IMG/VR virus record: IMGVR_UViG_3300017991_005548
Coordinates: 62,001-126,000 of that record
Direction: 5' to 3' (one strand)
Length of the DNA: 64,000 nucleotides
Shown: one piece after another, positions 1 to 44,028 of the stretch
Layout: each line of letters begins with the position of its first letter
Position numbering within the stretch: position 1 is the stretch's first letter
Notes under the pieces: model-generated
What the model was told of the DNA's origin: nothing
The model's input: only the letters and a program-made list of their open reading frames with translations
The model's database searches: none
Made by a program: the position numbers and the translations under genes

Positions 1-600
1 GCTTTCATCTGGACTTTGGACCATTAGGTAGTAATTGCCCCAAGGAATGTCATCATCATCAAATACCCACTCTACAGGACATTCATCCTTTAGTTTAATT
101 TCAGCATATGTTTTTCTATTAACCTCAACAGTACGGAATCCTTCATCAAGAATAACACTTTCGCATACTCTGGTTGCTTCATAGCATTCAGCCCTGATCC
201 CAAGAGCATTCGCTTTCAGTCTAACGTTAATATCTCTTGAAATAACTATACACTCATTCTCTGGCTCTTGAGCCTTCATAATATCTGCAATATGAAGTAC
301 ATGAAAATCGACATCCTTCTCCTTTCTATAGGTTCCTAAGTTGCCATTATAAATAACTCTTATTTGACCTTCCCTATCATCTCCTAATCTAACCCCTTTT
401 CTTAAATCCCCCAATTCTCTGAATTTGTCGAGTGATCTAGAAACTTGACGGGAGTTTCGCCCTAACGCCCCATTGTCTCTTTTGAATGTGTCTAGCTCTT
501 CAATCACTCCGATTGGAATAATCACAGTATGTTCCTCAAAACTGAATATCGCTTCAGGATCTTGCAACAGAACATTTGTGTCAATAACGAAATTTTTCAT
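1..600 (-). CDS. phoH: PhoH-family protein (PIN domain + PhoH ATPase), runs off the window edge
   Basis: Manual translation from ATG at 600 (RBS AGGAGG): MKNFVIDTNVLLQDPEAIFSFEEHTVIIPIGVIEELDTFKR...SRDINVRLKANALGI, the PIN N-terminus typical of PhoH2/YlaK; not in the ORF track because truncated. Confidence 0.85.
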   Translation of the reverse strand, partial: MKNFVIDTNVLLQDPEAIFSFEEHTVIIPIGVIEELDTFKRDNGALGRNSRQVSRSLDKFRELGDLRKGVRLGDDREGQIRVIYNGNLGTYRKEKDVDFHVLHIADIMKAQEPENECIVISRDINVRLKANALGIRAECYEATRVCESVILDEGFRTVEVNRKTYAEIKLKDECPVEWVFDDDDIPWGNYYLMVQSPDES

Positions 601-3350: not shown

Positions 3351-4133
3351 TTAGGTTAAAAAATCTTTGTCAACGTAATGCACCATGAACTTACATACAG
3401 TATCGATAAGTTCATCAGGCATTCTTTTAAAACATTCGTTCACAAACTCATCTGGAACGTTTTTGTAATATGCATGAGCAATTGAGCCAGCCATAGCCGC
3501 AATGGTATCGCTGTCTCCACCCATCATTACTGCTTCTCTTATTGTACTCTCAAAATCCTCAGAATACAAGAAAGCGTATACAGCTTGCGGAACTGTCTCC
3601 TGGCAACTACAATTAAATCCTAGATGCTCAGAGGTCAAAATAAGGTCCGTTCTGTATCCAAACGACTCTACTGCTTCTCTAATTTCTTGCTTTGTCCCTC
3701 CATGCCAAGCTATGAATGTTGCCAAAGCAATTGCTTGAGCACCTTTAACTCCCTCTTCATGATTATGAGTCGCATCAGCACTCTTTTTGGCCTCTGCTAG
3801 AACATCCTTTTTAGATCTGCAATAGAAAGCAACAGGGCTAACTCTCATCGCAGACCCATTGCCATAACTATTATACCCTTCTTCTTGCTCACTTAAAGCC
3901 CACTCTTTGAAAGCACTACCATACCCTCTATCTTTGTAATTTCTATAGTATTCACGAATAGATTGTGAATAGTTTCCTGAATTCATCAAAACATCTGCTA
4001 CTGCGCAGGTTAGAACAGTATCGTCAGTAAAAATACACTTCTTGTTGAATAGAAGAAAATTTTTGGTTTTGGGGTGTCTTTTTGGGCCTTCCCAACGAGA
4101 GCCTATTATGTCTCCTAAAATCGCGCCTATCAC
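3351..4133 (-). CDS. ADP-ribosylglycohydrolase (DraG/ARH family)
   Basis: GAILGDIIGS, FTDDT, SYGNGSAMR, GGDSDTIAAMAG motifs; probable GTG start at 4133 coupled (GTGA) to upstream stop. Confidence 0.9.
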   Translation of the reverse strand: MIGAILGDIIGSRWEGPKRHPKTKNFLLFNKKCIFTDDTVLTCAVADVLMNSGNYSQSIREYYRNYKDRGYGSAFKEWALSEQEEGYNSYGNGSAMRVSPVAFYCRSKKDVLAEAKKSADATHNHEEGVKGAQAIALATFIAWHGGTKQEIREAVESFGYRTDLILTSEHLGFNCSCQETVPQAVYAFLYSEDFESTIREAVMMGGDSDTIAAMAGSIAHAYYKNVPDEFVNECFKRMPDELIDTVCKFMVHYVDKDFLT

Positions 4134-5149
4134 AATCTTTCTCCTTTTACTCTTTCCTTTTCGTACCCTAACCAAACTTTCCAACTTTTCCAGCCTCTAT
4201 CTTTATAAGTCCTATCTGGCACACTTGGTAAACAAACAGGTCTAGTATTTTCTTTCCAATATAAACACCATTCTGTTTTGCTTCTTATTCCCAATTTATG
4301 AACGAATTTTTCTGCTTCTTTATAAGGCATAAACCCACTTTTTGCAACTTTTATACTCCCCAAATCATAAAATTTGTTCTTTTTCCTTATTAAAAATAAA
4401 TTCGAAGGAGTGTTATACATATATTCTCTTAAAAGTATCGAACTGTTCTTAGCCACCCTAACTCTATAATACTTCTCTTTTAAACTTCTAACATTCCCCC
4501 TAAAACCATTTATATTTTCTTTTAATTTTAATAACAAACCATATGAGAACTTCTCACTTCCACTAGTAAGAGATGATTCTATGGAGTTCCTAGATATAGA
4601 TACATTACCGTCTCCGTCCCATAGCCCTCGTATAAAATCTGGCAGAAATTCTTCTGGAACATTAGGCATTTCACATGTCAGGCTTTTTCTCTCAGTTCCA
4701 CCTATTTTTTTAATTGATTCAACTAAATTTCTACAATAAATGTTCAAATGACAATATTTGCTTCTTGTCTCTTTAATGGGTCCATCAAAACCCATCGTTT
4801 TTGCGATTAACTCTAATAGATATTTATCTTTATTACTTTGCGTAATTGAAAACAAACTTTCATAAATACACCCATCTGCCCACCAAAAACCCAAAATATA
4901 CGCCATATCATGAGTCCATATCTCAAAGAAATCCTCATTTATCGAATATTTATCTCTTTTATAGGACATCTTTTTATACCCCATCCAATCCATGTACGAA
5001 ACCCATTCCGACTTATATACTTGATGAGGACTGCGAGGAATGAATGGAGGTCTGTTGTTTTTACACCAATCTTCCCATTCTGACTGCTTTTTAAGACCTA
5101 ATTGACGTACATATTGTCTTGCTTCTTCAAATAACAGGAATTTACTCAT
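4130..5149 (-). mobile_element. free-standing LAGLIDADG homing endonuclease with terminal integrase-repeat-like domains
   Basis: YILGFWWADG and FIRGLWDGDG motifs; N- and C-terminal F/YxEA(R/E)xxVxxLG...EW repeats. Confidence 0.85.
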
Positions 5150-5651: not shown

Positions 5652-6755
5652 TTATCGGTGATCAGCCATCTCTTTCAGAATTCTTGAGAACCAAAGTTTT
5701 CTTGAAAATTCCCAAGCTTCATTTTGGGTTTCTTCGTTCTCATCTTTAACAGAAAAAGAACCCATTGGTATCCTTGCGGCTCCTGCACCCATTTTTCCGC
5801 CACCATGTTCTTTCCCAAAAATCTTTTTACAGATCTTATCAACATCAATGGCCAGTCCGCTACTTCTAACACTGACTTCCAGGTTATCTCCGACAATAGC
5901 AACAATAAAAGAAGTGTCAATACCCTCGACTCTAGCTCTTTCTTCAGCTATACTTGGAAGGGCATCTCTTTTTGCAGGGGTTATGTAACCAATTCCTCCA
6001 AGAAACACTCCATTCTCTGAAATAGCATGTCCGTCATGGTCCAATCTTTTTCTAAGATCAAAATGATATGGTGGAATTGGATAGTTGATGATTTTAGCAA
6101 GCATTTTTTGATCTGTAACAACAATCAAGCTCTTATACGCATCAAAATCGAGATCTGTAACGACATCTGTAACTAAATCGCACGTATCTGTCTTAATGCC
6201 AATTAACAATGCTGTTGCAACATTAGAATCTTCTTCTGACATTTTGTCGAACTCTATTTTAGCCTGCATCATGTATTCCCATACAATCGTGGAAGCAGAG
6301 CCGACACTTCTAATGTCTTTTAATTTTGCCTTCTTTGTATCACCTTTATGATGATCAATAACCAAAGTGTAGACTGCATTGGGTATTGCGCTCCTTTCTG
6401 GAATGGTATCTACACAAACATATATGTCGGCAAAATTCTCAACATCTTCAGGAGTTTGAAGTTCCCCCTCAACCTCATCAACATGCGTTAACTGAAGATT
6501 AAGAACATTAATCATAGTTTTGTTTTGGGGATGGGAAATCTCTCCACTATAAATCAAAGAAACTCTAGCTTCTGGAAGCCAACTTCTGATAAGTCTTTTG
6601 AGTCCATATGCAGATCCGATACAGTCTGGGTCTGGACAGGAATGCATTGTTATTGCAATATGAAGTTGATGATTTGCCTCAAAAACCTCAAAAAGTTCAT
6701 CTTTGAACTGATCTGCAATATGGTCAACATTCTTTACTTCTTCTTTTTCATCCAT
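5652..6755 (-). CDS. DHH/DHHA1 family phosphoesterase (NrnA-like)
   Basis: HxxPDPD, DHH, GIKTDT, SVRS, GGG motifs. Confidence 0.9.
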   Translation of the reverse strand: MDEKEEVKNVDHIADQFKDELFEVFEANHQLHIAITMHSCPDPDCIGSAYGLKRLIRSWLPEARVSLIYSGEISHPQNKTMINVLNLQLTHVDEVEGELQTPEDVENFADIYVCVDTIPERSAIPNAVYTLVIDHHKGDTKKAKLKDIRSVGSASTIVWEYMMQAKIEFDKMSEEDSNVATALLIGIKTDTCDLVTDVVTDLDFDAYKSLIVVTDQKMLAKIINYPIPPYHFDLRKRLDHDGHAISENGVFLGGIGYITPAKRDALPSIAEERARVEGIDTSFIVAIVGDNLEVSVRSSGLAIDVDKICKKIFGKEHGGGKMGAGAARIPMGSFSVKDENEETQNEAWEFSRKLWFSRILKEMADHR

Positions 6756-7409: not shown

Positions 7410-7451
7410 ACAATTATTCCGACACTTATCCCGACATTTTGTCGGGATTCA

Positions 7452-7574
7452 GAAAAACGCCAGTGTATTGCTCATTTATACTACCTCACAAAGTTTAGAA
7501 TGCTGAATAGAACCTTATTCAAGTTCACTTTTAATAGTACTGTATGGGTGGGATTCGAACCCACATCTCTGGCT
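7452..7574 (-). ncRNA. circularly permuted tRNA-like RNA 1
   Basis: 3' half (GCCAG, AGAT, T arm GTGGG-TTCGAAT-CCCAC, CCATACA; 7540-7574) precedes 5' half (TGTGAGG, D arm, CTGGC; 7452-7490); linker holds the CAGCA element. Confidence 0.7.
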
Positions 7575-7657: not shown

Positions 7658-7785
7658 ATGAGTCGGAAGGAATCGAACCTTCATTCCCTGGTTGATTTAT
7701 TAAACATCAAATAGTTGCTGGAACGAAACTTATACAGTTTCACTTGGTTTTATGTCCAGGAGTTCTACCATTAAACTACGACCCA
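7658..7785 (-). ncRNA. tRNA-like gene with CAGCAA element inside the anticodon arm
   Basis: Acceptor TGGGTCG/CGACTCA, D and T arms intact, stem CCTGG/CCAGG enclosing ~60 nt; no CCA. Confidence 0.7.
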
Positions 7786-7805: not shown

Positions 7806-7882
7806 TGGTCGGGTATGCAGGATTCGAACCTGCGATCTCATCATCCCAAATGATGCGCCTTACCAGACTAGGCTAATACCCG
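7806..7882 (-). tRNA. tRNA-Pro(TGG)
   Basis: Loop TTTGGGA, CCA. Confidence 0.95.
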
Positions 7883-8055
7883 ATACAGAAGTGTTTTATC
7901 CTGTTAAACTATCCCCAACAAGATCGTACTTTAAGTCATCTGACACTAACTCATTTCTGACCCCAGAATATATTTTATTGTTTTGAATGTCAGTTCGTAA
8001 CAACTACTTTACACTCTTAAGCCGAGGCTGGGACTCGAACCCAGATCTCTCCTTT
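7883..8055 (-). ncRNA. circularly permuted tRNA-like RNA 2
   Basis: 3' half (AGGAG, AGAT, CTGGG-TTCGAGT-CCCAG, CCTCGGC; 8020-8055) precedes 5' half (GTTGGGG, D arm, CTTCT; 7883-7919) with ~100-nt linker. Confidence 0.7.
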
Positions 8056-8146
8056 TGGTGACGCAGACGGGATTCGAACCCGCAAAGGAATCTCTTCCTA
8101 CCAGATTGAAAGTCTGGTTACTTCAGGCCAATTTGTATACTGCGCC
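8056..8146 (-). tRNA. tRNA-Glu(TTC) with long variable arm
   Basis: CCAGA-CTTTCAA-TCTGG; V arm AGGAA-GAGA-TTCCT; CCA. Confidence 0.85.
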
Positions 8147-8152
8147 ATTTTT

Positions 8153-8273
8153 TAGTCAGGACGGCTGGATTCGAACCAACTCCTTTAGCTCCTCAAGCTA
8201 AAATAAATATTGCTGTAGCGAACCTTATTGTCAAGTTCATGTTTATAACGTGCTACCATTACACTACGTCCTG
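8153..8273 (-). ncRNA. tRNA-like gene (C1-G72 body, GAG anticodon) with CAGCAA element between D and anticodon arms
   Basis: CAGGACG/CGTCCTG acceptor, 47-nt insert after D arm, TTAGC-TTGAGGA-GCTAA, ends A-CTA. Confidence 0.7.
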
Positions 8274-8503: not shown

Positions 8504-8512
8504 ATGGACAAT

Positions 8513-8578
8513 AAAAAAGCCCTCCTAACGCAAGCTAAGAGGGCACAAAAAAAGCCCTCCCGCTCATGGCAGAAGGGC
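8513..8578 (-). terminator. two tandem intrinsic terminators of the Glu/Pro attenuator
   Basis: GCCCT...AGGGC+U7 (8547-8578) and GCCCTC...GAGGGC+U6 (8513-8544). Confidence 0.8.
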
Positions 8579-8600
8579 CAAAATCATAGTTATGATCTAA

Positions 8601-8678
8601 CTACAGATCGGCTGACCTCCTGCCAAAGGCTGGCGGTTCTTCTCGTTCTGGTTCTCGAATGTACATGTAGTTGTTCAT
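8601..8678 (-). CDS. Glu/Pro attenuator leader peptide MNNYMYIREPEREEPPAFGRRSADL
   Basis: 25 codons with GAA x4 and CCA/CCG x3; RBS AAAGGA. Confidence 0.8.
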   Translation of the reverse strand: MNNYMYIREPEREEPPAFGRRSADL

Positions 8679-8703
8679 AACAAATTTTCCTTTCGTTACC
8701 CCC

Positions 8704-8731
8704 ATTATAAACCATCCTAGAGACTTTTCAA
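8704..8731 (-). promoter_or_regulatory. promoter of the Glu/Pro tRNA operon
   Basis: TTGAAA-N16-TATAAT. Confidence 0.8.
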
Positions 8732-9076: not shown

Positions 9077-9594
9077 TACTTCTGAAAAACTCTTGCTCTT
9101 TTGGCATGAGATTGTCTAGCGGCAACCATTCGTGGATCATCATCAGCCAAACTCAATCCTTGTTCTGCTCCCAAAAGGAAAGAGTCAACGACTTCACGGG
9201 CCAATTTATGATTTTCTCCCCATTCTGGGTTTGTGGCAAATAGAAGGTCAATACCATTCAAAAGAGCCAAAGAGCCTGCTAAGGCCAAAGGGCGTTCGTT
9301 TGGCTTAATTTTACCCTCTGCAACGGCTTTATCGAGGTAATCCTCAACAACAGGGAAAAGAACCTGGGTATAGGTTGCTCCTTGAGAGGTATCAGCGGTT
9401 ACACCTTTGATAACTCCAATAACTTCTTTTACAACTGCCATTTCTTCTGGAGTTGGGTCGTCATAAGCAACCCAGGTTACTGAGGCACCTAAACCTGCGT
9501 TCAGAGCTACTACTTTTGCTTGGCTTGGTGTACAACCAGTTAATGGGATCATCAACATGGCTACGATTGCGGTGAAAAACATACTTCTTTTCAT
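9076..9594 (-). CDS. putative lipoprotein
   Basis: Signal peptide with lipobox LTGC. Confidence 0.65.
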   Translation of the reverse strand: MKRSMFFTAIVAMLMIPLTGCTPSQAKVVALNAGLGASVTWVAYDDPTPEEMAVVKEVIGVIKGVTADTSQGATYTQVLFPVVEDYLDKAVAEGKIKPNERPLALAGSLALLNGIDLLFATNPEWGENHKLAREVVDSFLLGAEQGLSLADDDPRMVAARQSHAKRARVFQK

Positions 9595-10112
9595 TTCAAG
9601 TTCTCCTTATTTTTGGTTAATTTTACTGAAATAAATCTTGGTTCATCTTTTCTACTAGTGACAGTCGCAAAATCAGAGCATTTTTCTACAATTTCGTCCA
9701 TTTTGCTCTTCGCAACATTAATATTTACTCTACGTCTGATCTTCATGGTGAAATGAAGTTCATGGCCATGATCAATAAACTCTTGAGCGTGTTTCATTTT
9801 ATGCTCAACATCATGATCGTCAATCGAAGGAGTAAAACGTATCTCCTTCATCTCATGTTTTTGATCTTTTTGTTGCTTCTTTTGTTTTTTACCTTTTTGA
9901 TATTTCCACTTACCGTAATCAATCAACTTACATAATGGGTTGTTCTTCTCGGTTTCCCCAGAGAAACAAACTAGGTCTAAACCTTTGTCCTGAGCTATCT
10001 CAATAGCATCAAGTGTTTTGATTTCTCTGTGAAATTTGTTATTTTCATCAACCAAATCAAGAATGACGAAGCTTTTGCTGTCAACGACCAAGAACGGTTC
10101 CATGGACTTCAA
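9591..10112 (-). CDS. infC: translation initiation factor IF-3
   Basis: AQDKGLDLV...CKLIDYGKWKYQ...KEIRFTPSIDDHD signature. Confidence 0.9.
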   Translation of the reverse strand: MKSMEPFLVVDSKSFVILDLVDENNKFHREIKTLDAIEIAQDKGLDLVCFSGETEKNNPLCKLIDYGKWKYQKGKKQKKQQKDQKHEMKEIRFTPSIDDHDVEHKMKHAQEFIDHGHELHFTMKIRRRVNINVAKSKMDEIVEKCSDFATVTSRKDEPRFISVKLTKNKENLK

Positions 10113-26322: not shown

Positions 26323-26805
26323 ATGGATTTATATTTTTTACAAGACCAAGGAGACGCTTTGGTTTATAATGACGGAATTGCATATGAGTTTGTTGAGCAA
26401 ACAGTTCAAGTCCCAAATGCAAGTGGAGCGCAAGTTATTGAAGGAAACATCTCTTCATTTAATTTCAGCATTGCTGACGCACAATTAAAAACAGCTTACA
26501 CTGCTGGTGAACATGCTTTGGCTTTTTATGTTGATGAAAATAAAATTGAAGTTGACATGCCCCTTGCCAACACTTGGTATACTTTCCCCGATGTTCCAGT
26601 TGCAGGAGTTATTCGGGTTTGGCAAACGGGAGCATTTTACCCAAACATAAAAATTAATGGTATTGATCAGGCCGTTAACGCAGGAACAAGCAAAGCTAGT
26701 GCAATGCCATACAATGTTGCTGTTGGAGATGTAATCGAAATACGAGAACCAACTACTAGTGGAAACACTGGGTACGGATATATATTGCCATTTGTTTATC
26801 CATAA
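26323..26805 (+). CDS. hypothetical beta-rich protein
   Basis: ORF track, RBS AGGAGG. Confidence 0.55.
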   Translation: MDLYFLQDQGDALVYNDGIAYEFVEQTVQVPNASGAQVIEGNISSFNFSIADAQLKTAYTAGEHALAFYVDENKIEVDMPLANTWYTFPDVPVAGVIRVWQTGAFYPNIKINGIDQAVNAGTSKASAMPYNVAVGDVIEIREPTTSGNTGYGYILPFVYP

Positions 26806-28834: not shown

Positions 28835-28925
28835 TGGTGGGAGTAGCAGGACTTGAACCTGCGTTTACCTTTCGGCCTCCTGTGTATCAGACAGGCGCTC
28901 TAACCAAATACTGAGCTATACTCCC
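28835..28925 (-). tRNA. tRNA-Ile(GAT) with long variable arm
   Basis: Loop CTGATAC; V arm GCC-GAAA-GGT; CCA. Confidence 0.85.
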
Positions 28926-32563: not shown

Positions 32564-33997
32564 TTAGACGGTGACCCCTTCTGGGACTACGATTTCATAC
32601 TTCTCGATTGCTCGATCAAGTACTGCCATTGGCGAGAAATCAGTGCCTCCGAGAACTGCGCCTAAGATTGAAGGACTGAAGCCACTTACAAGAGCAACAT
32701 TCTCATGCGTACCTCTTGCAGGACTTCCTGCATATCCAGCAGTATTCCAATATACAATCTTTGGACGACTGTATCCATTTGCTTCCCACTCTTCCATGCA
32801 TCTTTCAATAGTGGTCTTATCGCAGTTACTAGCGCCAGAGCACCAGCCTCCACCATTATCGAACTGCATGTCTGAAATGATCAACAGACAGTTTGGAATC
32901 TGTTCATCAGTTACGTTGAACATCTTTGCAGAGTTCAGGATCTGATCAAGAGCCGCCTTGACGTTCGTTGATCCACAATATCCTTCTCTTCTGCAACGCT
33001 GAATTCCCTGAACAAAAGTCTTTCCCTTCCAATCGACAAGGTGACTGTCGTTTGAGAATGGAATGAACTTCCTGTAGAAAGGGTTATCCTTTCCAACCCT
33101 GTCAGAGCAGTACAATCCCAAACTGGTTGAGATATCAATAGCTCTGATAGAACCAGAGACAGTAACTCCCATAGATCCAGAGAAGTCACAAATTGGCATG
33201 ATTCTCATGTTGCAGTCTTCCATGAAGTTTGGAAGAGCTTCAAACTGAGCATTTGCCAACTTACCATCCTTGTTAGCAGTACGAAGAACGTCATGTGGGA
33301 ACAAAGCACTTGCGTTAACCTTGTTGTCAGAGTCCTCGTCAGTCAAAGACTCTCTCCACTGATCGTATCTTGCAGGATCATGCTTCAAGAATGCGTTAGC
33401 AGATCTTGCCATTGCGACAGAAGGAACAGTGTTGTAGTCAATGTCATGCCAGTCGCCTGAGCACATTGCAGTCTCTACAACATTAGTGTACTCAGCCAAG
33501 TGCTTTCTGAATACCTTTGGAGACATTCCGAGAGCCTTTCTAAGCTTTGCGAAAACAACCTTGTTCTTCTTCTCTCTTGGTGCCCACTTGCAAGCAAGAC
33601 CATGCTTATCAGCAATAGCTCTTGCCCAGTACTGGATTGCAGTATCTTCGCAAGGAGTATCGATACATGCAGTCAAGTCATCCCAACGTCCAGTCTCTGG
33701 AATAAGATGAATATTGACAGTAATCCACTCAGGATGCTTCTCAGCCATCCACTTCAATACAGAACGGAATCCGCTTCTGTTACCTGCTCCACCTCTAGCA
33801 TCACGAAGCCAGAAAGCAAGCTTTGCGGCACGAAGTTGATCGGACTTGAACGCAGGCTTAAACAAGTTCAGAGCACCTGCCTCCGAACCGTAGTAGCTAC
33901 CACGCTTCTCGAAAAGTGATCCTGCCTTGGAGAAGAACTCCAAAAGTGCGTTTCCAGTTGAGTCATACAGAAAGTCGTTGTTGTGTCCTCTTGCCAT
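32564..33997 (-). CDS. TROVE-like/DUF2828 family protein with vWA domain
   Basis: FWLRDARGGAG.R..FR, GRWDDL, KWAPRE, DFSGSM MIDAS, ISDMQFD, IVYWN. Confidence 0.8.
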   Translation of the reverse strand: MARGHNNDFLYDSTGNALLEFFSKAGSLFEKRGSYYGSEAGALNLFKPAFKSDQLRAAKLAFWLRDARGGAGNRSGFRSVLKWMAEKHPEWITVNIHLIPETGRWDDLTACIDTPCEDTAIQYWARAIADKHGLACKWAPREKKNKVVFAKLRKALGMSPKVFRKHLAEYTNVVETAMCSGDWHDIDYNTVPSVAMARSANAFLKHDPARYDQWRESLTDEDSDNKVNASALFPHDVLRTANKDGKLANAQFEALPNFMEDCNMRIMPICDFSGSMGVTVSGSIRAIDISTSLGLYCSDRVGKDNPFYRKFIPFSNDSHLVDWKGKTFVQGIQRCRREGYCGSTNVKAALDQILNSAKMFNVTDEQIPNCLLIISDMQFDNGGGWCSGASNCDKTTIERCMEEWEANGYSRPKIVYWNTAGYAGSPARGTHENVALVSGFSPSILGAVLGGTDFSPMAVLDRAIEKYEIVVPEGVTV

Positions 33998-34028
33998 CGT
34001 ACCATCCTCCTATTGTTGGTTTTGTGTC

Positions 34029-34094
34029 AAAAAAAAGACCAGTCAAACTTGGTTCCGAGTCCCATCTCGCGTATGGAACAAAGTCTAACTGGTC
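34029..34094 (-). terminator. long terminator-like hairpin just upstream of the TROVE-like gene
   Basis: GACCAGTTAGACTT/AAGTTTGACTGGTC + U8. Confidence 0.7.
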
Positions 34095-34111
34095 AAAGTT
34101 AAAAATCGGAA

Positions 34112-34459
34112 CAGGTTAGCAATTTTGGTTTTCATTTCAAGTGAAAGTTTTGGTTGCTGTAACTAACCTTCTATCCTAAATTAAAAATTTGAACAGACTG
34201 ACTTGTTTTTTTTAGCATAAAAAATTTTGAGTTGCTGAATGCAGTCTTATATCAAATTGTTTTTCTAAATTTTCCTTTTTCTTGTTTTCAAAGAAACAAG
34301 TGAAACAGCTTGGGTTTTCCATCCTTTATTTCAGACCTCGATGAATTTGGGTCCTCAAATTTATTTTTAAAACCCTCTCGACTGGGTTCTCGTTTTATTT
34401 CTGTCAGGGCGACTCTGACGCTCGTTTTATCGTGTTTTTTGGTTGCAGTAACCAAGCTT
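34112..34459 (-). ncRNA. structured leader with three CAGCAA elements and anticodon-loop mimics
   Basis: AAG-N8-C(A/T)GCAA at 34154-70, 34232-48, 34443-59, each closed by a helix+CTG; TTTCA-CTTGAAA-TGAAA and T6-ATGCTAA-A6 hairpins. Confidence 0.7.
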
Positions 34460-34477
34460 TATTCAGTTGTTGGTTCC

Positions 34478-34505
34478 ATTATAAGGATTACGAAAAACTT
34501 TTCAA
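34478..34505 (-). promoter_or_regulatory. promoter of TROVE leader
   Basis: TTGAAA-N16-TATAAT. Confidence 0.8.
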
Positions 34506-34534
34506 GTCGGTTTTGAATATTTTTTTTGAATTTT

Positions 34535-41576: not shown

Positions 41577-41698
41577 TGGCGGATGAGGTAGGATTCGAAC
41601 CTACACTGTAGCGGTTTCTGTTTTTTGGTTGCTGAAGAGAACCTTTTTGTCAAGTTCATTTTTTGGACCGCCGTCTCTGCCAGTTGGACTACTCATCC
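41577..41698 (-). ncRNA. tRNA-like gene with CAGCAA element in the anticodon loop
   Basis: GGATGAG/CTCATCC-GCCA; stem GCGGT/ACCGC encloses 51 nt. Confidence 0.75.
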
Positions 41699-43940: not shown

Positions 43941-44028
43941 TGGAGCGCGGTGAGGGATTCGAACCCTCGCGGACATAAGTCCCATCAGTTTTGCAGACTG
44001 TGCCATTAAACCACTCTGGCAACCGCGC
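43941..44028 (-). tRNA. tRNA-Cys(GCA) with long variable arm
   Basis: Loop CTGCAAA; V arm GGAC-TTAT-GTCC; U73 CCA. Confidence 0.85.

What the first reader, a model, noticed from the sequence alone, without database searches (positions are those of the whole stretch)
7883..8055. Circularly permuted tRNA-like RNA 2
It has the same permuted layout and fills the whole gap between the CCA of tRNA-Glu and the 5' end of tRNA-Pro, so normal processing of the neighbours would release it. It shares the AGAT variable region and GT after the anticodon stem with RNA 1, but has no complete anticodon loop. Its ~100-nt linker is different (CTGACA/TGTCAG and TTCTG/CAGAA helices). Two independent copies argue against random decay.
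Basis: seen in the sequence. Interest (0 to 1): 0.72.

Follow-up and report, generated by a model that had tools for sequence, protein, structure and literature searches.

The report
Permuted tRNA-core mimic RNA in phage
The gap between two tRNA genes of a giant phage holds a real, conserved small RNA built like a tRNA whose halves are swapped and which has no anticodon loop or CCA end. It most resembles the tRNA-mimicking Y RNAs that work with Ro60 proteins, and this phage encodes a Ro60-like protein.

Summary
On the minus strand, 8053-7887 reads: anticodon-stem 3' strand, AGAT, a canonical T arm, a 7-bp acceptor-like stem around a 101-nt linker, a D arm, then the anticodon-stem 5' strand. 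It lies 2 nt after the CCA of tRNA-Glu and 4 nt before tRNA-Pro.

It is not debris. I found 11 further RNAs of the same layout in syntenic Glu/Pro tRNA clusters of related metagenomic phages. The end-closing helix covaries at all 5 pairs, and the T-like and D loops co-vary as a kissing pair.

In these relatives the "acceptor plus linker" shrinks to as little as 7 nt. The conserved unit is therefore the tRNA core, not a tRNA precursor. No 7-nt anticodon loop can be rebuilt and no CCA is encoded.

The layout equals the tRNA-like domain of YrlA Y RNAs. The window encodes a DUF2828 protein with a Ro60 fold, and the larger record encodes RtcB and an Rnl2-like ligase.

However, the Rfam YrlA model, the Ro-binding motif and the adjacency rule are all not met. 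Best reading: a new, array-embedded variant of a tRNA-mimic RNA. Its partner and function are inferred, not shown.

The parts
7887..8053 (-). RNA 2 core: a permuted tRNA-core RNA, from the closing helix 5' strand to the closing helix 3' strand
   Evidence: Sequence reading. It matches the descriptor with 5/5 closing pairs, 5/5 T-stem pairs and the D-arm motif. CM R1 gives 52.8 bits, but RNA 2 was in its training set. In profiles built from relatives only, its 3' module ranks 1st and its 5' module 4th in the 296-kb genome.
8049..8053 (-). Closing helix 5' strand AGGAG (equivalent to the anticodon-stem 3' strand). It pairs with 7887-7891.
   Evidence: In the family alignment all 5 pairs of this helix show changes on both sides, and 98.5% of cells are paired.
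8028..8048 (-). AGAT (variable-loop equivalent ending in U48) plus a canonical T arm, CTGGG TTCGAGT CCCAG
   Evidence: In all 13 members the 4-nt joiner ends in U and the D loop starts with AA, which fits an A15:U48 Levitt-pair equivalent.
7913..8027 (-). Variable middle: the acceptor-like stem CCTCGGC/GTTGGGG (3 G-U pairs) enclosing the 101-nt linker 8020-7920
   Evidence: In relatives this segment is 7-42 nt, and 66 nt in RNA 1. Linker fold z = -1.2 against shuffles. Its similarity to the CAGCAA element is weak (score 33 against 26 +/- 4, about 8% of shuffles reach it).
7887..7912 (-). ATA connector, D arm GTTT AACAGGATA AAAC, A, and the closing 3' strand CTTCT
   Evidence: This is the best-conserved module of the family (TAGTWTAA...RWAC). 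It is the top genome-wide hit of the relatives-only 3' profile.
8056..8146 (-). Upstream tRNA-Glu(UUC) with a long variable arm. Its CCA ends 2 nt before RNA 2.
   Evidence: ARAGORN and Rfam tRNA model, 51.3 bits.
7806..7882 (-). Downstream tRNA-Pro(UGG). RNase P cleavage at its 5' end would set the 3' end of RNA 2 (inferred).
   Evidence: ARAGORN and Rfam tRNA model, 70.2 bits.
7459..7573 (-). RNA 1, the paralogue in the same array. Same layout, with closing helix GCCAG/CTGGC; its middle part carries the hairpin-CAGCAA element.
   Evidence: Found by the CM built from relatives only (R2, 38.8 bits, E = 5e-8). Its linker matches the RNA upstream of the Ro-like gene (score 34 against 21 +/- 3, 0 of 300 shuffles).
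32564..33997 (-). Ro60-like protein (Pfam DUF2828 + DUF7788). It is the candidate protein partner; this is inferred.
   Evidence: Pfam. AlphaFold2 model with a 46-sequence alignment, pLDDT 91.5. The top 13 Foldseek PDB matches are all Ro60/TROVE, full length, E down to 5e-8.

Best explanation
RNA 2 is a functional member of a previously uncatalogued family of tRNA-derived small RNAs with circularly permuted connectivity.

Architecture. Its 5' and 3' ends pair as an anticodon-stem-like helix. Inside sit a variable-loop remnant, a T arm, a dispensable acceptor-like hairpin of variable length, and a D arm. The RNA keeps the tRNA core and elbow, meaning the U8-A14 and A15-U48 equivalents and the D-loop/T-loop contact. 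It has no anticodon loop and no free CCA end.

Production (inferred). It is transcribed as part of the phage's Glu/Pro tRNA array. It is set free by the enzymes that trim its neighbours: a cut after the CCA of tRNA-Glu, and RNase P at tRNA-Pro.

Function (inferred). It is not a tRNA precursor. It acts as a tRNA-core mimic, in the manner of the tRNA-like domain of YrlA Y RNAs. Most probably it belongs to the phage's RNA-repair and translation-protection toolkit, which includes a Ro60-like DUF2828 protein, RtcB and an Rnl2-like ligase. There it would serve as a scaffold or decoy for a tRNA-binding factor.

Status of the steps. Shown: the structure, its conservation, the covariation, the gene context and the Ro60 fold. 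Inferred: expression, the ends of the RNA, the protein partner and the biological role.
For: Family and synteny.
- Thirteen members exist with the same order of modules: RNA 2, RNA 1 and 11 in related phages. The relatives have DHH proteins 61-72% identical and the same IF3...tRNA cluster...DHH gene order.
- Eleven of the 13 start 1-10 nt after an encoded CCA.

Covariation.
- In the family alignment 95% of cells are paired, against 72% in shuffles (0 of 500 shuffles reach it). The covariation score is 0.72 against 0.27. Sliding the partners gives 37-47% pairing.
- The closing helix has changes on both sides at 5 of 5 pairs.
- The loops co-vary in three classes: UUCGAR with GG, YAUGG with CCA(U), and UAUGAAAU with UUCA. 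This indicates a tRNA-like elbow.

The middle is dispensable. It ranges from 7 nt (L042:79-134) to 118 nt (RNA 2), so the acceptor and linker are not the conserved part.

Independent models.
- A CM built from relatives only finds RNA 1 at E = 5e-8.
- Relatives-only sequence profiles rank RNA 2's 3' module 1st and its 5' module 4th genome-wide, 140 nt apart and in the right order.

Parallel with YrlA. The YrlA layout (V, T, acceptor-like stem-loop, D between paired ends; no free CCA; found in phages with Ro60) is described in PMC4201824. The Rfam YrlA model itself aligns across a 3'-half/5'-half junction here.

Gene context. The window encodes a Ro60-fold protein. The overlapping 476-kb record encodes RtcB next to an insert-bearing tRNA and an Rnl2-family ligase. 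RNA 1's linker shares a motif with the conserved RNA just upstream of the Ro-like gene.
Against: - No expression data exist. No RNA run was listed, and the three DNA runs that hold the phage are identical in sequence.
- RNA 2 lies 24.5 kb from the Ro-like gene.
- It lacks the GNCGAAN0-1G motif; its 5' strand reads AGGAGAG.
- Its closing helix is only 5 bp, which is too short for a classical Ro-binding stem.
- The Rfam YrlA model gives no hit on RNA 1, RNA 2 or the compact relatives.
- The relatives-only CM does not recover RNA 2 as a whole, because of its 118-nt middle.
- RNA 2's acceptor-like stem is rich in G-U pairs and its tRNA-like fold is not the MFE. RNA 2 could therefore be a weakened copy.
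- All relatives come from one phage clade, so the covariation counts include shared ancestry.
Confidence: 0.55

Rival explanations
1. It is a true circularly permuted tRNA gene. The ends left by processing of the neighbours are joined by a phage RNA ligase across the anticodon loop. RNase P and 3' trimming plus CCA addition then open the acceptor end, giving a working or at least chargeable tRNA.
For: The layout is that of permuted tRNA genes, and RNA 2 has a 7-bp acceptor-like stem. ARAGORN calls the de-permuted sequence a tRNA. The phage record encodes RtcB and an Rnl2-like ligase. M. smegmatis YrlA, which has a 7-bp stem, is cut by RNase P and receives CCA (PMC4201824).
Against: Joining the ends gives a 6-nt loop, GUAUAA, with no sensible anticodon. 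There is no bulge-helix-bulge at the ends and no splicing endonuclease. No CCA is encoded, although 43 of 46 phage tRNAs encode it, and the stem has 3 G-U pairs. Family members in relatives have only 7-42 nt in place of acceptor and linker, so aminoacylation cannot be the conserved function.
Confidence: 0.07
2. It is non-functional debris. A tandem pair of tRNA genes lost its outer halves through recombination in a fast-changing array. RNA 2 in particular would be a decaying copy that has taken up a 100-nt insertion.
For: The array is visibly rearranged. The 3' tail of RNA 1 carries repeated fragments of the ends of tRNA-Pro (7410-7458). Two adjacent tRNAs mimic the layout trivially. For RNA 2 itself: the stem is G-U rich, the linker is unstructured, and the cloverleaf is not the MFE. 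An ordinary tRNA-Glu(CUC)-like gene elsewhere has the family's exact D arm, consistent with origin from a tRNA (L047).
Against: Thirteen copies in several phages keep all three helices through compensatory changes. They even re-invent the loop-loop contact with new base pairs. RNA 2 keeps every conserved module and every tertiary-pair position. Debris would not keep anticodon-stem strands complementary when they lie 160 nt apart.
Confidence: 0.12
3. It is a tRNA-core mimic that works without the Ro-like protein. It could be a decoy or sponge for a host tRNA-targeting defence nuclease or a tRNA-binding enzyme. Alternatively it could be a cis-acting element that organises folding and processing of the polycistronic tRNA transcript.
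For: It always lies inside tRNA arrays, right after a tRNA's 3' end and followed by a U-rich spacer. It looks like a tRNA already cut in the anticodon loop. Phage tRNA arrays are widely viewed as counter-defence (for example PMC7824862). It is 24.5 kb from the Ro-like gene and has no Ro-binding motif.
Against: There is no direct evidence for any target. The Ro60-fold gene, RtcB and the motif shared between RNA 1 and the RNA upstream of the Ro-like gene point to the Ro-type system instead.
Confidence: 0.25

Closest known systems
YrlA (Y RNA-like A; Rfam RF02553), the bacterial and phage Y RNAs with a tRNA-like domain (Chen et al. 2014, PMC4201824)
   Same: The order of modules is the same: paired 5'/3' ends, a variable-region remnant, a T arm, an acceptor-like stem-loop closed at its end, and a D arm. 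tRNA core nucleotides are kept. There is no anticodon loop and no free CCA. The genome also encodes a Ro60-fold protein and RtcB.
   Different: The Rfam model gives no hit. The GNCGAAN0-1G motif is absent from RNA 2 and is exact in only one relative (L020:9008-9081). The closing helix is only 5-6 bp. The RNA is embedded in a tRNA array 24.5 kb from the Ro-like gene, not within 4 kb of it. The Ro-like protein is a DUF2828 type that the Pfam TROVE model does not detect. The acceptor-like arm can be nearly absent.
Circularly permuted tRNA genes of Cyanidioschyzon merolae, some green algae and Thermofilum pendens (from my own knowledge; reviewed in PMC3400036 and PMC4238349, which one search listed but which I did not read)
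   Same: The 3' half lies upstream of the 5' half, with the break in the anticodon region and a linker between the acceptor strands.
   Different: Those genes mature through a bulge-helix-bulge cut and a circular intermediate into normal tRNAs with a full anticodon loop. Here there is no such motif, no splicing endonuclease and no rebuildable loop, and the homologues have no acceptor stem at all.
Two-piece tmRNA from permuted ssrA genes (from my own knowledge)
   Same: It is a permuted, tRNA-derived bacterial or phage RNA whose acceptor end is opened by processing.
   Different: tmRNA has a chargeable acceptor end with CCA, a tag reading frame and pseudoknots. ARAGORN finds no tmRNA here, and RNA 2 has none of these parts.

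Membership tests
YrlA / Y RNA-like | tRNA-like domain in the order V, T stem-loop, acceptor-like stem-loop, D stem-loop, closed by pairing of the 5' and 3' parts | tested here: met
   Segment table of 13 members and covariation of the three helices. The layout as defined in PMC4201824.
YrlA / Y RNA-like | GNCGAAN0-1G motif near the 5' end (the presumed Ro60 contact) | tested here: not met
   RNA 2 reads AGGAGAG and RNA 1 reads GCCAGAG. Only L020:9008-9081 has GCCGAAG exactly; others read GAUGAAG or GGUGAAG. The motif as defined.
YrlA / Y RNA-like | Encoded within about 4 kb of a Ro60 orthologue, on the same strand | tested here: not met
   RNA 2 is on the same strand but 24.5 kb from the Ro-like gene at 32564-33997. 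The space directly upstream of that gene is taken by a different conserved RNA.
YrlA / Y RNA-like | A Ro60 (TROVE + vWA) protein is encoded in the genome | tested here: inconclusive
   Pfam TROVE is not detected in G000 or G001. However, the DUF2828/DUF7788 protein models with pLDDT 91.5, and its 13 best PDB matches are all Ro60. The fold is met; binding to this RNA is untested.
YrlA / Y RNA-like | Match to the Rfam RF02553 covariance model | tested here: not met
   No hit on RNA 1, RNA 2 or compact relatives even at E <= 10. The only weak hit (16.6 bits) spans a junction between two tRNAs.
Circularly permuted tRNA gene | The 3' half is encoded upstream of the 5' half of one and the same tRNA | tested here: met
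   The halves pair in the anticodon-stem and acceptor-stem equivalents.
Circularly permuted tRNA gene | The ends can be joined to give a normal 7-nt anticodon loop, with a bulge-helix-bulge or other defined joining signal | tested here: not met
   The ends give a 6-nt loop, GUAU + AA. The flanks are the neighbouring tRNAs themselves. No tRNA splicing endonuclease domain is present.
Circularly permuted tRNA gene | A full acceptor stem with discriminator and CCA, conserved among homologues | tested here: not met
   RNA 2 has 7 bp with 3 G-U pairs and no CCA. Homologues have 7-42 nt in its place.
Circularly permuted tRNA gene | A circular intermediate and a mature tRNA are seen in RNA data | not testable with these tools
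   No RNA run was listed for this sequence.

The most novel reading that the evidence does not exclude
Giant phages of this clade carry a Y-RNA-like system that has been rebuilt from parts. It would consist of a divergent Ro60 (DUF2828), a long conserved RNA upstream of that gene, and a set of RNAs spread through the tRNA arrays. These are acceptor-less permuted tRNA cores such as RNA 2, together with tRNAs carrying a hairpin-CAGCAA insert. They would be released by tRNA processing and would recruit or divert tRNA-handling enzymes (RtcB, ligase, nucleases) during infection. In this reading RNA 2 is a working trans-acting component, and its ends may even be sealed into a circle by the phage ligases.
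Probability: 0.3. Interest if true: 0.8.

Novelty: new variant of a known kind. Interest (0 to 1): 0.62.

Why it matters
tRNA mimics are rare and informative, because they show which parts of a tRNA cellular machines read. This family keeps only the core and elbow of a tRNA. It discards the acceptor end and the anticodon loop, and it is produced at no extra cost by the tRNA-processing machinery inside phage tRNA arrays.

If it works with the phage's Ro60-like protein, three things would follow:
- The Ro/Y-RNA system would extend to the large, unstudied DUF2828 family, which has thousands of homologues in metagenomes.
- A concrete function would be assigned to "junk" spacers in phage tRNA clusters.
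- A tractable model would exist for how a pair of tandem tRNA genes turns into a new non-coding RNA.

For annotation, it warns that tRNA finders miss these elements. It also warns that gaps in phage tRNA arrays are not empty.

Tried and rejected
- Exact-pattern scans of IMG/VR, for the CAGCAA element and for the UAUGG-class RNA, gave only the phage itself or chance hits.
- Single-protein locus searches found only the same phage or a distant relative without nearby tRNAs.
- BLAST against phage genomes gave only tRNA-level matches.
- Sequencing runs: three DNA metagenomes hold the identical sequence, so they offer no variants for covariation. No RNA run was listed.
- Rfam showed nothing but tRNAs.
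- The relatives-only CM R2 could not span RNA 2's 118-nt middle, even with filters off. I replaced this test with module profiles.
- A single-sequence AlphaFold run of the DUF2828 protein was useless (pLDDT 36). HMMER against PDB sequences found nothing. Only the alignment-based model worked.
- The 19-mer D-arm scan of metagenomes added no new family member. It did turn up an ordinary tRNA with the same D arm.
Its match to the CAGCAA element is marginal.
- I considered and dropped three further readings. Protein coding: only a spurious 80-aa TTG ORF on the other strand. Two-piece tmRNA: ARAGORN finds none. Archaeal-type split or intron tRNA processing: no endonuclease.
- I did not run complex prediction, because it gives no verdict for RNA partners.

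Full report
**What the window is.** The window is bases 62001-126000 of a 296-kb IMG/VR virus record with 38% G+C. That record overlaps a 476-kb record of the same phage, offset by 212,353 bases. One of its proteins also occurs on a 524,692-bp contig. This is therefore a very large phage, from sediment and seawater metagenomes. All its tRNA genes lie on the minus strand: 46 by ARAGORN and 51 by the Rfam tRNA model, in several arrays.

**The observation.** In the Glu/Pro array, the minus-strand order is as follows:
- Glu, 8503-8428
- Pro, 8397-8319
- a tRNA with a 58-nt insert, 8273-8156
- Glu with a long variable arm, 8146-8056
- the finding, 8055-7883
- Pro, 7882-7806
- a tRNA with a 64-nt insert, 7785-7658
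- Glu(CUC), 7650-7575
- RNA 1, 7574-7410
- Pro(GGG), 7409-7332

The finding reads as follows:
- AA (spacer after the CCA)
- AGGAG
- AGAT
- CTGGG-TTCGAGT-CCCAG
- CCTCGGC
- a 101-nt linker
- GTTGGGG
- ATA
- GTTT-AACAGGATA-AAAC
- A
- CTTCT
- GTAT (spacer before tRNA-Pro)

The 3'-half-like part does precede the 5'-half-like part. The anticodon-stem strands, 160 nt apart, are complementary in 5 of 5 positions. Joining the ends gives only a 6-nt loop.

**Weak points of RNA 2 taken alone.**
- The acceptor-like stem has 3 G-U pairs. The phage's 46 real tRNAs have at most 2, and 43 of them encode CCA, which RNA 2 does not.
- The cloverleaf-constrained fold is 5.7 kcal/mol less stable than the MFE.
- The linker folds no better than shuffled sequence, z = -1.2.
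- A loose descriptor of the layout hits shuffled genomes about twice each.
- Two neighbouring tRNAs imitate the layout trivially.

The sequence alone therefore does not settle whether this is a working RNA.

**Relatives settle it.** The DHH phosphoesterase gene next to the array (5652-6755) has many metagenomic homologues at 61-74% identity. Their contigs keep the gene order IF3 ... Glu/Pro tRNA cluster ... DHH. In these clusters I found 11 more RNAs with the same order of modules:
1. a 5-6-nt closing strand
2. 4 nt ending in U
3. a 5-bp hairpin with a 7-8-nt loop
4. a variable middle ending in UA
5. a D arm of the form GUNU-AA...-RNAC
6. one nucleotide
7. the complementary closing strand, followed by a U-rich spacer

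Eleven of the 13 members begin 1-10 nt after an encoded CCA.

**Covariation in the family.** On an alignment made with covariance model R1, 95% of cells pair, against 72% in column shuffles (0 of 500 reach it). The covariation score is 0.72 against 0.27. Sliding the 3' partners by 1-3 columns drops pairing to 37-47%. All five pairs of the closing helix show changes on both sides. This alignment was fitted to the structure and includes the training sequences, so the numbers lean toward the structure. The pair table nevertheless speaks for itself: the closing helices include AGGAG/CUUCU, GCCAG/CUGGC, GCGAG/CUCGC, GCCGA/UCGGC, GAUGA/UCAUC and UAUGG/CCAUA.

The two hairpin loops also co-vary, in three classes:
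- UUCGAR with a GG-containing D loop, the normal tRNA elbow (RNA 2 is in this class)
- YAUGG with CCA(U)
- UAUGAAAU with UUCA

The joiner always ends in U and the D loop always starts with AA, as expected for a 15:48 pair. These RNAs therefore keep a tRNA core and elbow under selection.

**Independent tests of membership.** A model built from the 11 relatives only (R2) finds RNA 1 in the 64-kb window at 38.8 bits, E = 5e-8. It cannot bridge the 118-nt middle of RNA 2. I therefore built relatives-only sequence profiles of the two end modules. Across both strands of the 296-kb genome, RNA 2's D-arm module is the top hit and its T-arm module is the fourth. The two lie 140 nt apart in the right order.

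**What the family is not.**
- The middle part, which in RNA 2 looks like an acceptor stem plus linker, varies widely. It is 7 nt in L042:79-134, 10 nt in L028:1026-1084, 23-42 nt in the others, 66 nt in RNA 1 and 118 nt in RNA 2. A chargeable acceptor end is therefore not the conserved feature.
- There is no rebuildable anticodon loop and no encoded CCA.
- There is no bulge-helix-bulge at the ends and no tRNA splicing endonuclease.
- Maturation into a tRNA through a circular intermediate, as in the known permuted tRNA genes, is thus unlikely.
- Debris is also unlikely, because three helices and a tertiary contact are kept through many compensatory changes.

**Likely origin.** An ordinary tRNA-Glu(CUC)-like gene in an unrelated metagenome contig carries the family's exact 19-nt D arm (L047). 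This fits an origin from a tRNA, plausibly from a tandem pair.

**What it resembles.** The layout is that of the tRNA-like domain of YrlA Y RNAs. These have paired ends, a variable-region remnant, a T arm, a closed acceptor-like stem-loop and a D arm, and no free CCA. They occur in more than 250 bacteria and in phages that encode Ro60. The one YrlA with a 7-bp stem (M. smegmatis) is cut by RNase P and receives CCA (PMC4201824). The Rfam YrlA model confirms the shared topology indirectly. Its only weak hit here spans the 3' half of tRNA-Pro and the 5' half of the next tRNA.

**The Ro60-like protein and ligases.** Following this lead, I modelled the DUF2828/DUF7788 protein at 32564-33997. The model used a 46-sequence alignment and reached pLDDT 91.5. 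Its 13 best matches in the PDB are all Ro60/TROVE proteins, aligned over the full length. They include D. radiodurans Rsr and a Thermus phage Ro60, with E down to 5e-8. The larger record of the phage also encodes two RNA ligases:
- RtcB, directly next to an insert-bearing tRNA (confirmed as RtcB family)
- an Rnl2-family ligase

Some relatives carry RtcB a few kb from the array. Jumbo phages with TROVE proteins and a tRNA-like partner have been noted before (PMC7824862).

**Limits of the YrlA parallel.**
- The Pfam TROVE model does not detect the protein.
- The Rfam YrlA model does not hit RNA 1, RNA 2 or the compact relatives.
- RNA 2 lacks the GNCGAAN0-1G motif.
- Its closing helix is only 5 bp.
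- It lies 24.5 kb from the Ro-like gene.

The place directly upstream of that gene is occupied by a different RNA of about 430-480 nt. That RNA is strongly conserved, with its own promoter and terminator. It contains three copies of a motif ending in CAGCAA. The same motif sits inside the insert-bearing tRNAs and in the linker of RNA 1. RNA 1's linker matches the upstream RNA with a score of 34 against 21 +/- 3 (0 of 300 shuffles). RNA 2's linker matches only marginally: 33 against 26 +/- 4, reached by about 8% of shuffles. RNA 1 is thus tied to the Ro-like locus by sequence. RNA 2 is tied only through its homology to RNA 1.

**Mechanism I think most likely.**
1. The array is transcribed as a unit. 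No terminator-like site lies inside it on the minus strand.
2. RNase P cuts at tRNA-Pro, and a cut after the CCA of tRNA-Glu releases RNA 2.
3. RNA 2 folds into an L-shaped tRNA core whose anticodon-stem end is open.
4. It then acts as a tRNA mimic, either with the Ro-like protein and the repair ligases or as a decoy for a tRNA-binding factor.

Only the structure, the conservation and the gene content are shown. Expression, ends, partner and role are inferred.

**Confidence.** I put about 0.85 on RNA 2 being a real member of a conserved structured RNA family that mimics the tRNA core. I put about 0.4 on it working with the Ro-like system. Overall confidence in the stated explanation is 0.55.

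**Novelty.** The family is not in Rfam 15. Searches of the held literature for permuted tRNAs in phages, tRNA introns in huge phages, and DUF2828 found no description of it. It is best filed as a new variant of a known kind, the YrlA-type tRNA mimic. It differs by being embedded in tRNA arrays, by having a dispensable acceptor arm, and by being paired with a divergent Ro60.

Noticed in passing
window 8156-8273 (-), 7658-7785 (-), 41577-41698 (-); G000 26586-26776 (-); L008 1270-1405 and about 3715-3830; also L016, L020, L024, L026, L028, L041, L042: tRNA genes carry a 50-110-nt insert, usually between the D arm and the anticodon arm (position 26/27). The insert has a conserved module: a hairpin (GAAYYUG...AAGRUUC, with compensatory changes), then 4 nt, then CAGCAA. 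The same module forms the linker of RNA 1. In relatives, the copy at the orthologous position is tRNA-Gln(UUG)-like (U1-A72), but its anticodon drifts (UUG, UAC, UAG, GAG). One copy is tRNA-Cys-like and lies directly next to RtcB. Whether the insert is an intron or a stable extra arm is unknown.
   Followed up: partly
window 32564-33997 (-): A DUF2828/DUF7788 protein has a full-length Ro60 (TROVE + vWA) fold: pLDDT 91.5, and the top 13 PDB matches are all Ro60. The Pfam TROVE model misses it. It has more than 4000 homologues in metagenomes. No paper in the held library links DUF2828 to Ro60.
   Followed up: yes
window 33998-34510 (-); L043 980-1519; L045 1960-2500: A strongly conserved non-coding RNA of about 430-480 nt lies directly upstream of the Ro-like gene. 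It has a near-consensus promoter (TTGAAA, 17-nt spacer, TATAAT), three long-range helices with compensatory changes, three '...CAGCAA' motifs, and a covarying terminator hairpin with a U run. It is the best candidate for the cognate Y RNA of this Ro-like protein.
   Followed up: partly
window 8056-8146, 28835-28925, 43941-44028; G000 9997-10084; L008 1179-1269; L009 1314-1400 and 2427-2515: Many amino acids have two tRNA genes side by side, one normal and one with a long variable arm. This occurs in tRNAs that are normally class I: Glu, Ile, Cys, Lys, Asn, Gly and Met, at 87-91 nt.
   Followed up: no
window 7410-7458 (-): The 3' tail of RNA 1 holds a perfect hairpin, ATCCCGAC-AAAAT-GTCGGGAT, and three repeats of GTCGG(G/A)AT. 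These are copies of the 3' and 5' ends of the adjacent tRNA-Pro(GGG), a trace of recombination in the array.
   Followed up: no
G000 197395-197469 (-), outside the window: A tRNA with anticodon CUA (an amber-suppressor type, which ARAGORN calls Pyl) is present. I did not test whether the phage reassigns TAG.
   Followed up: no
G001:198526-199671 (+) and G001:98705-99301 (-), outside the window: The 476-kb record of the same phage encodes RtcB, directly after an insert-bearing tRNA-Cys-like gene, and an Rnl2-family RNA ligase. It also holds the Gln, Asn, Gly and further Met, Leu and Arg tRNAs that are missing from the 296-kb record.
   Followed up: partly
window 8511-8731 (-): A near-consensus promoter (8731-8704) is followed by two tandem terminator hairpins (8579-8519) immediately upstream of the first tRNA of the array. 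Relatives have the same arrangement plus a short conserved reading frame. This may be a leader or attenuator of the array.
   Followed up: no
window 4130-5149 (-), 9591-10112 (-), 5652-6755 (-), 3351-4184 (-): Genes around the array encode a LAGLIDADG homing endonuclease, an IF3-like factor, a DHH (NrnA-like) phosphoesterase, and a protein that by sequence and by synteny with annotated relatives looks like an ADP-ribosylglycohydrolase (not scanned here). Relatives add NADAR, PhoH-PIN, R2K ATP-grasp and RtcB. Together these form a translation and RNA-repair island.
   Followed up: partly
L047 about 255-335 (-): An ordinary tRNA-Glu(CUC)-like gene in an unrelated metagenome contig has the exact 19-nt D arm (TAGTATAAAGGAATAGTAC) of the RNA 1-like family members. 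This points to the kind of tRNA the family came from.
   Followed up: no
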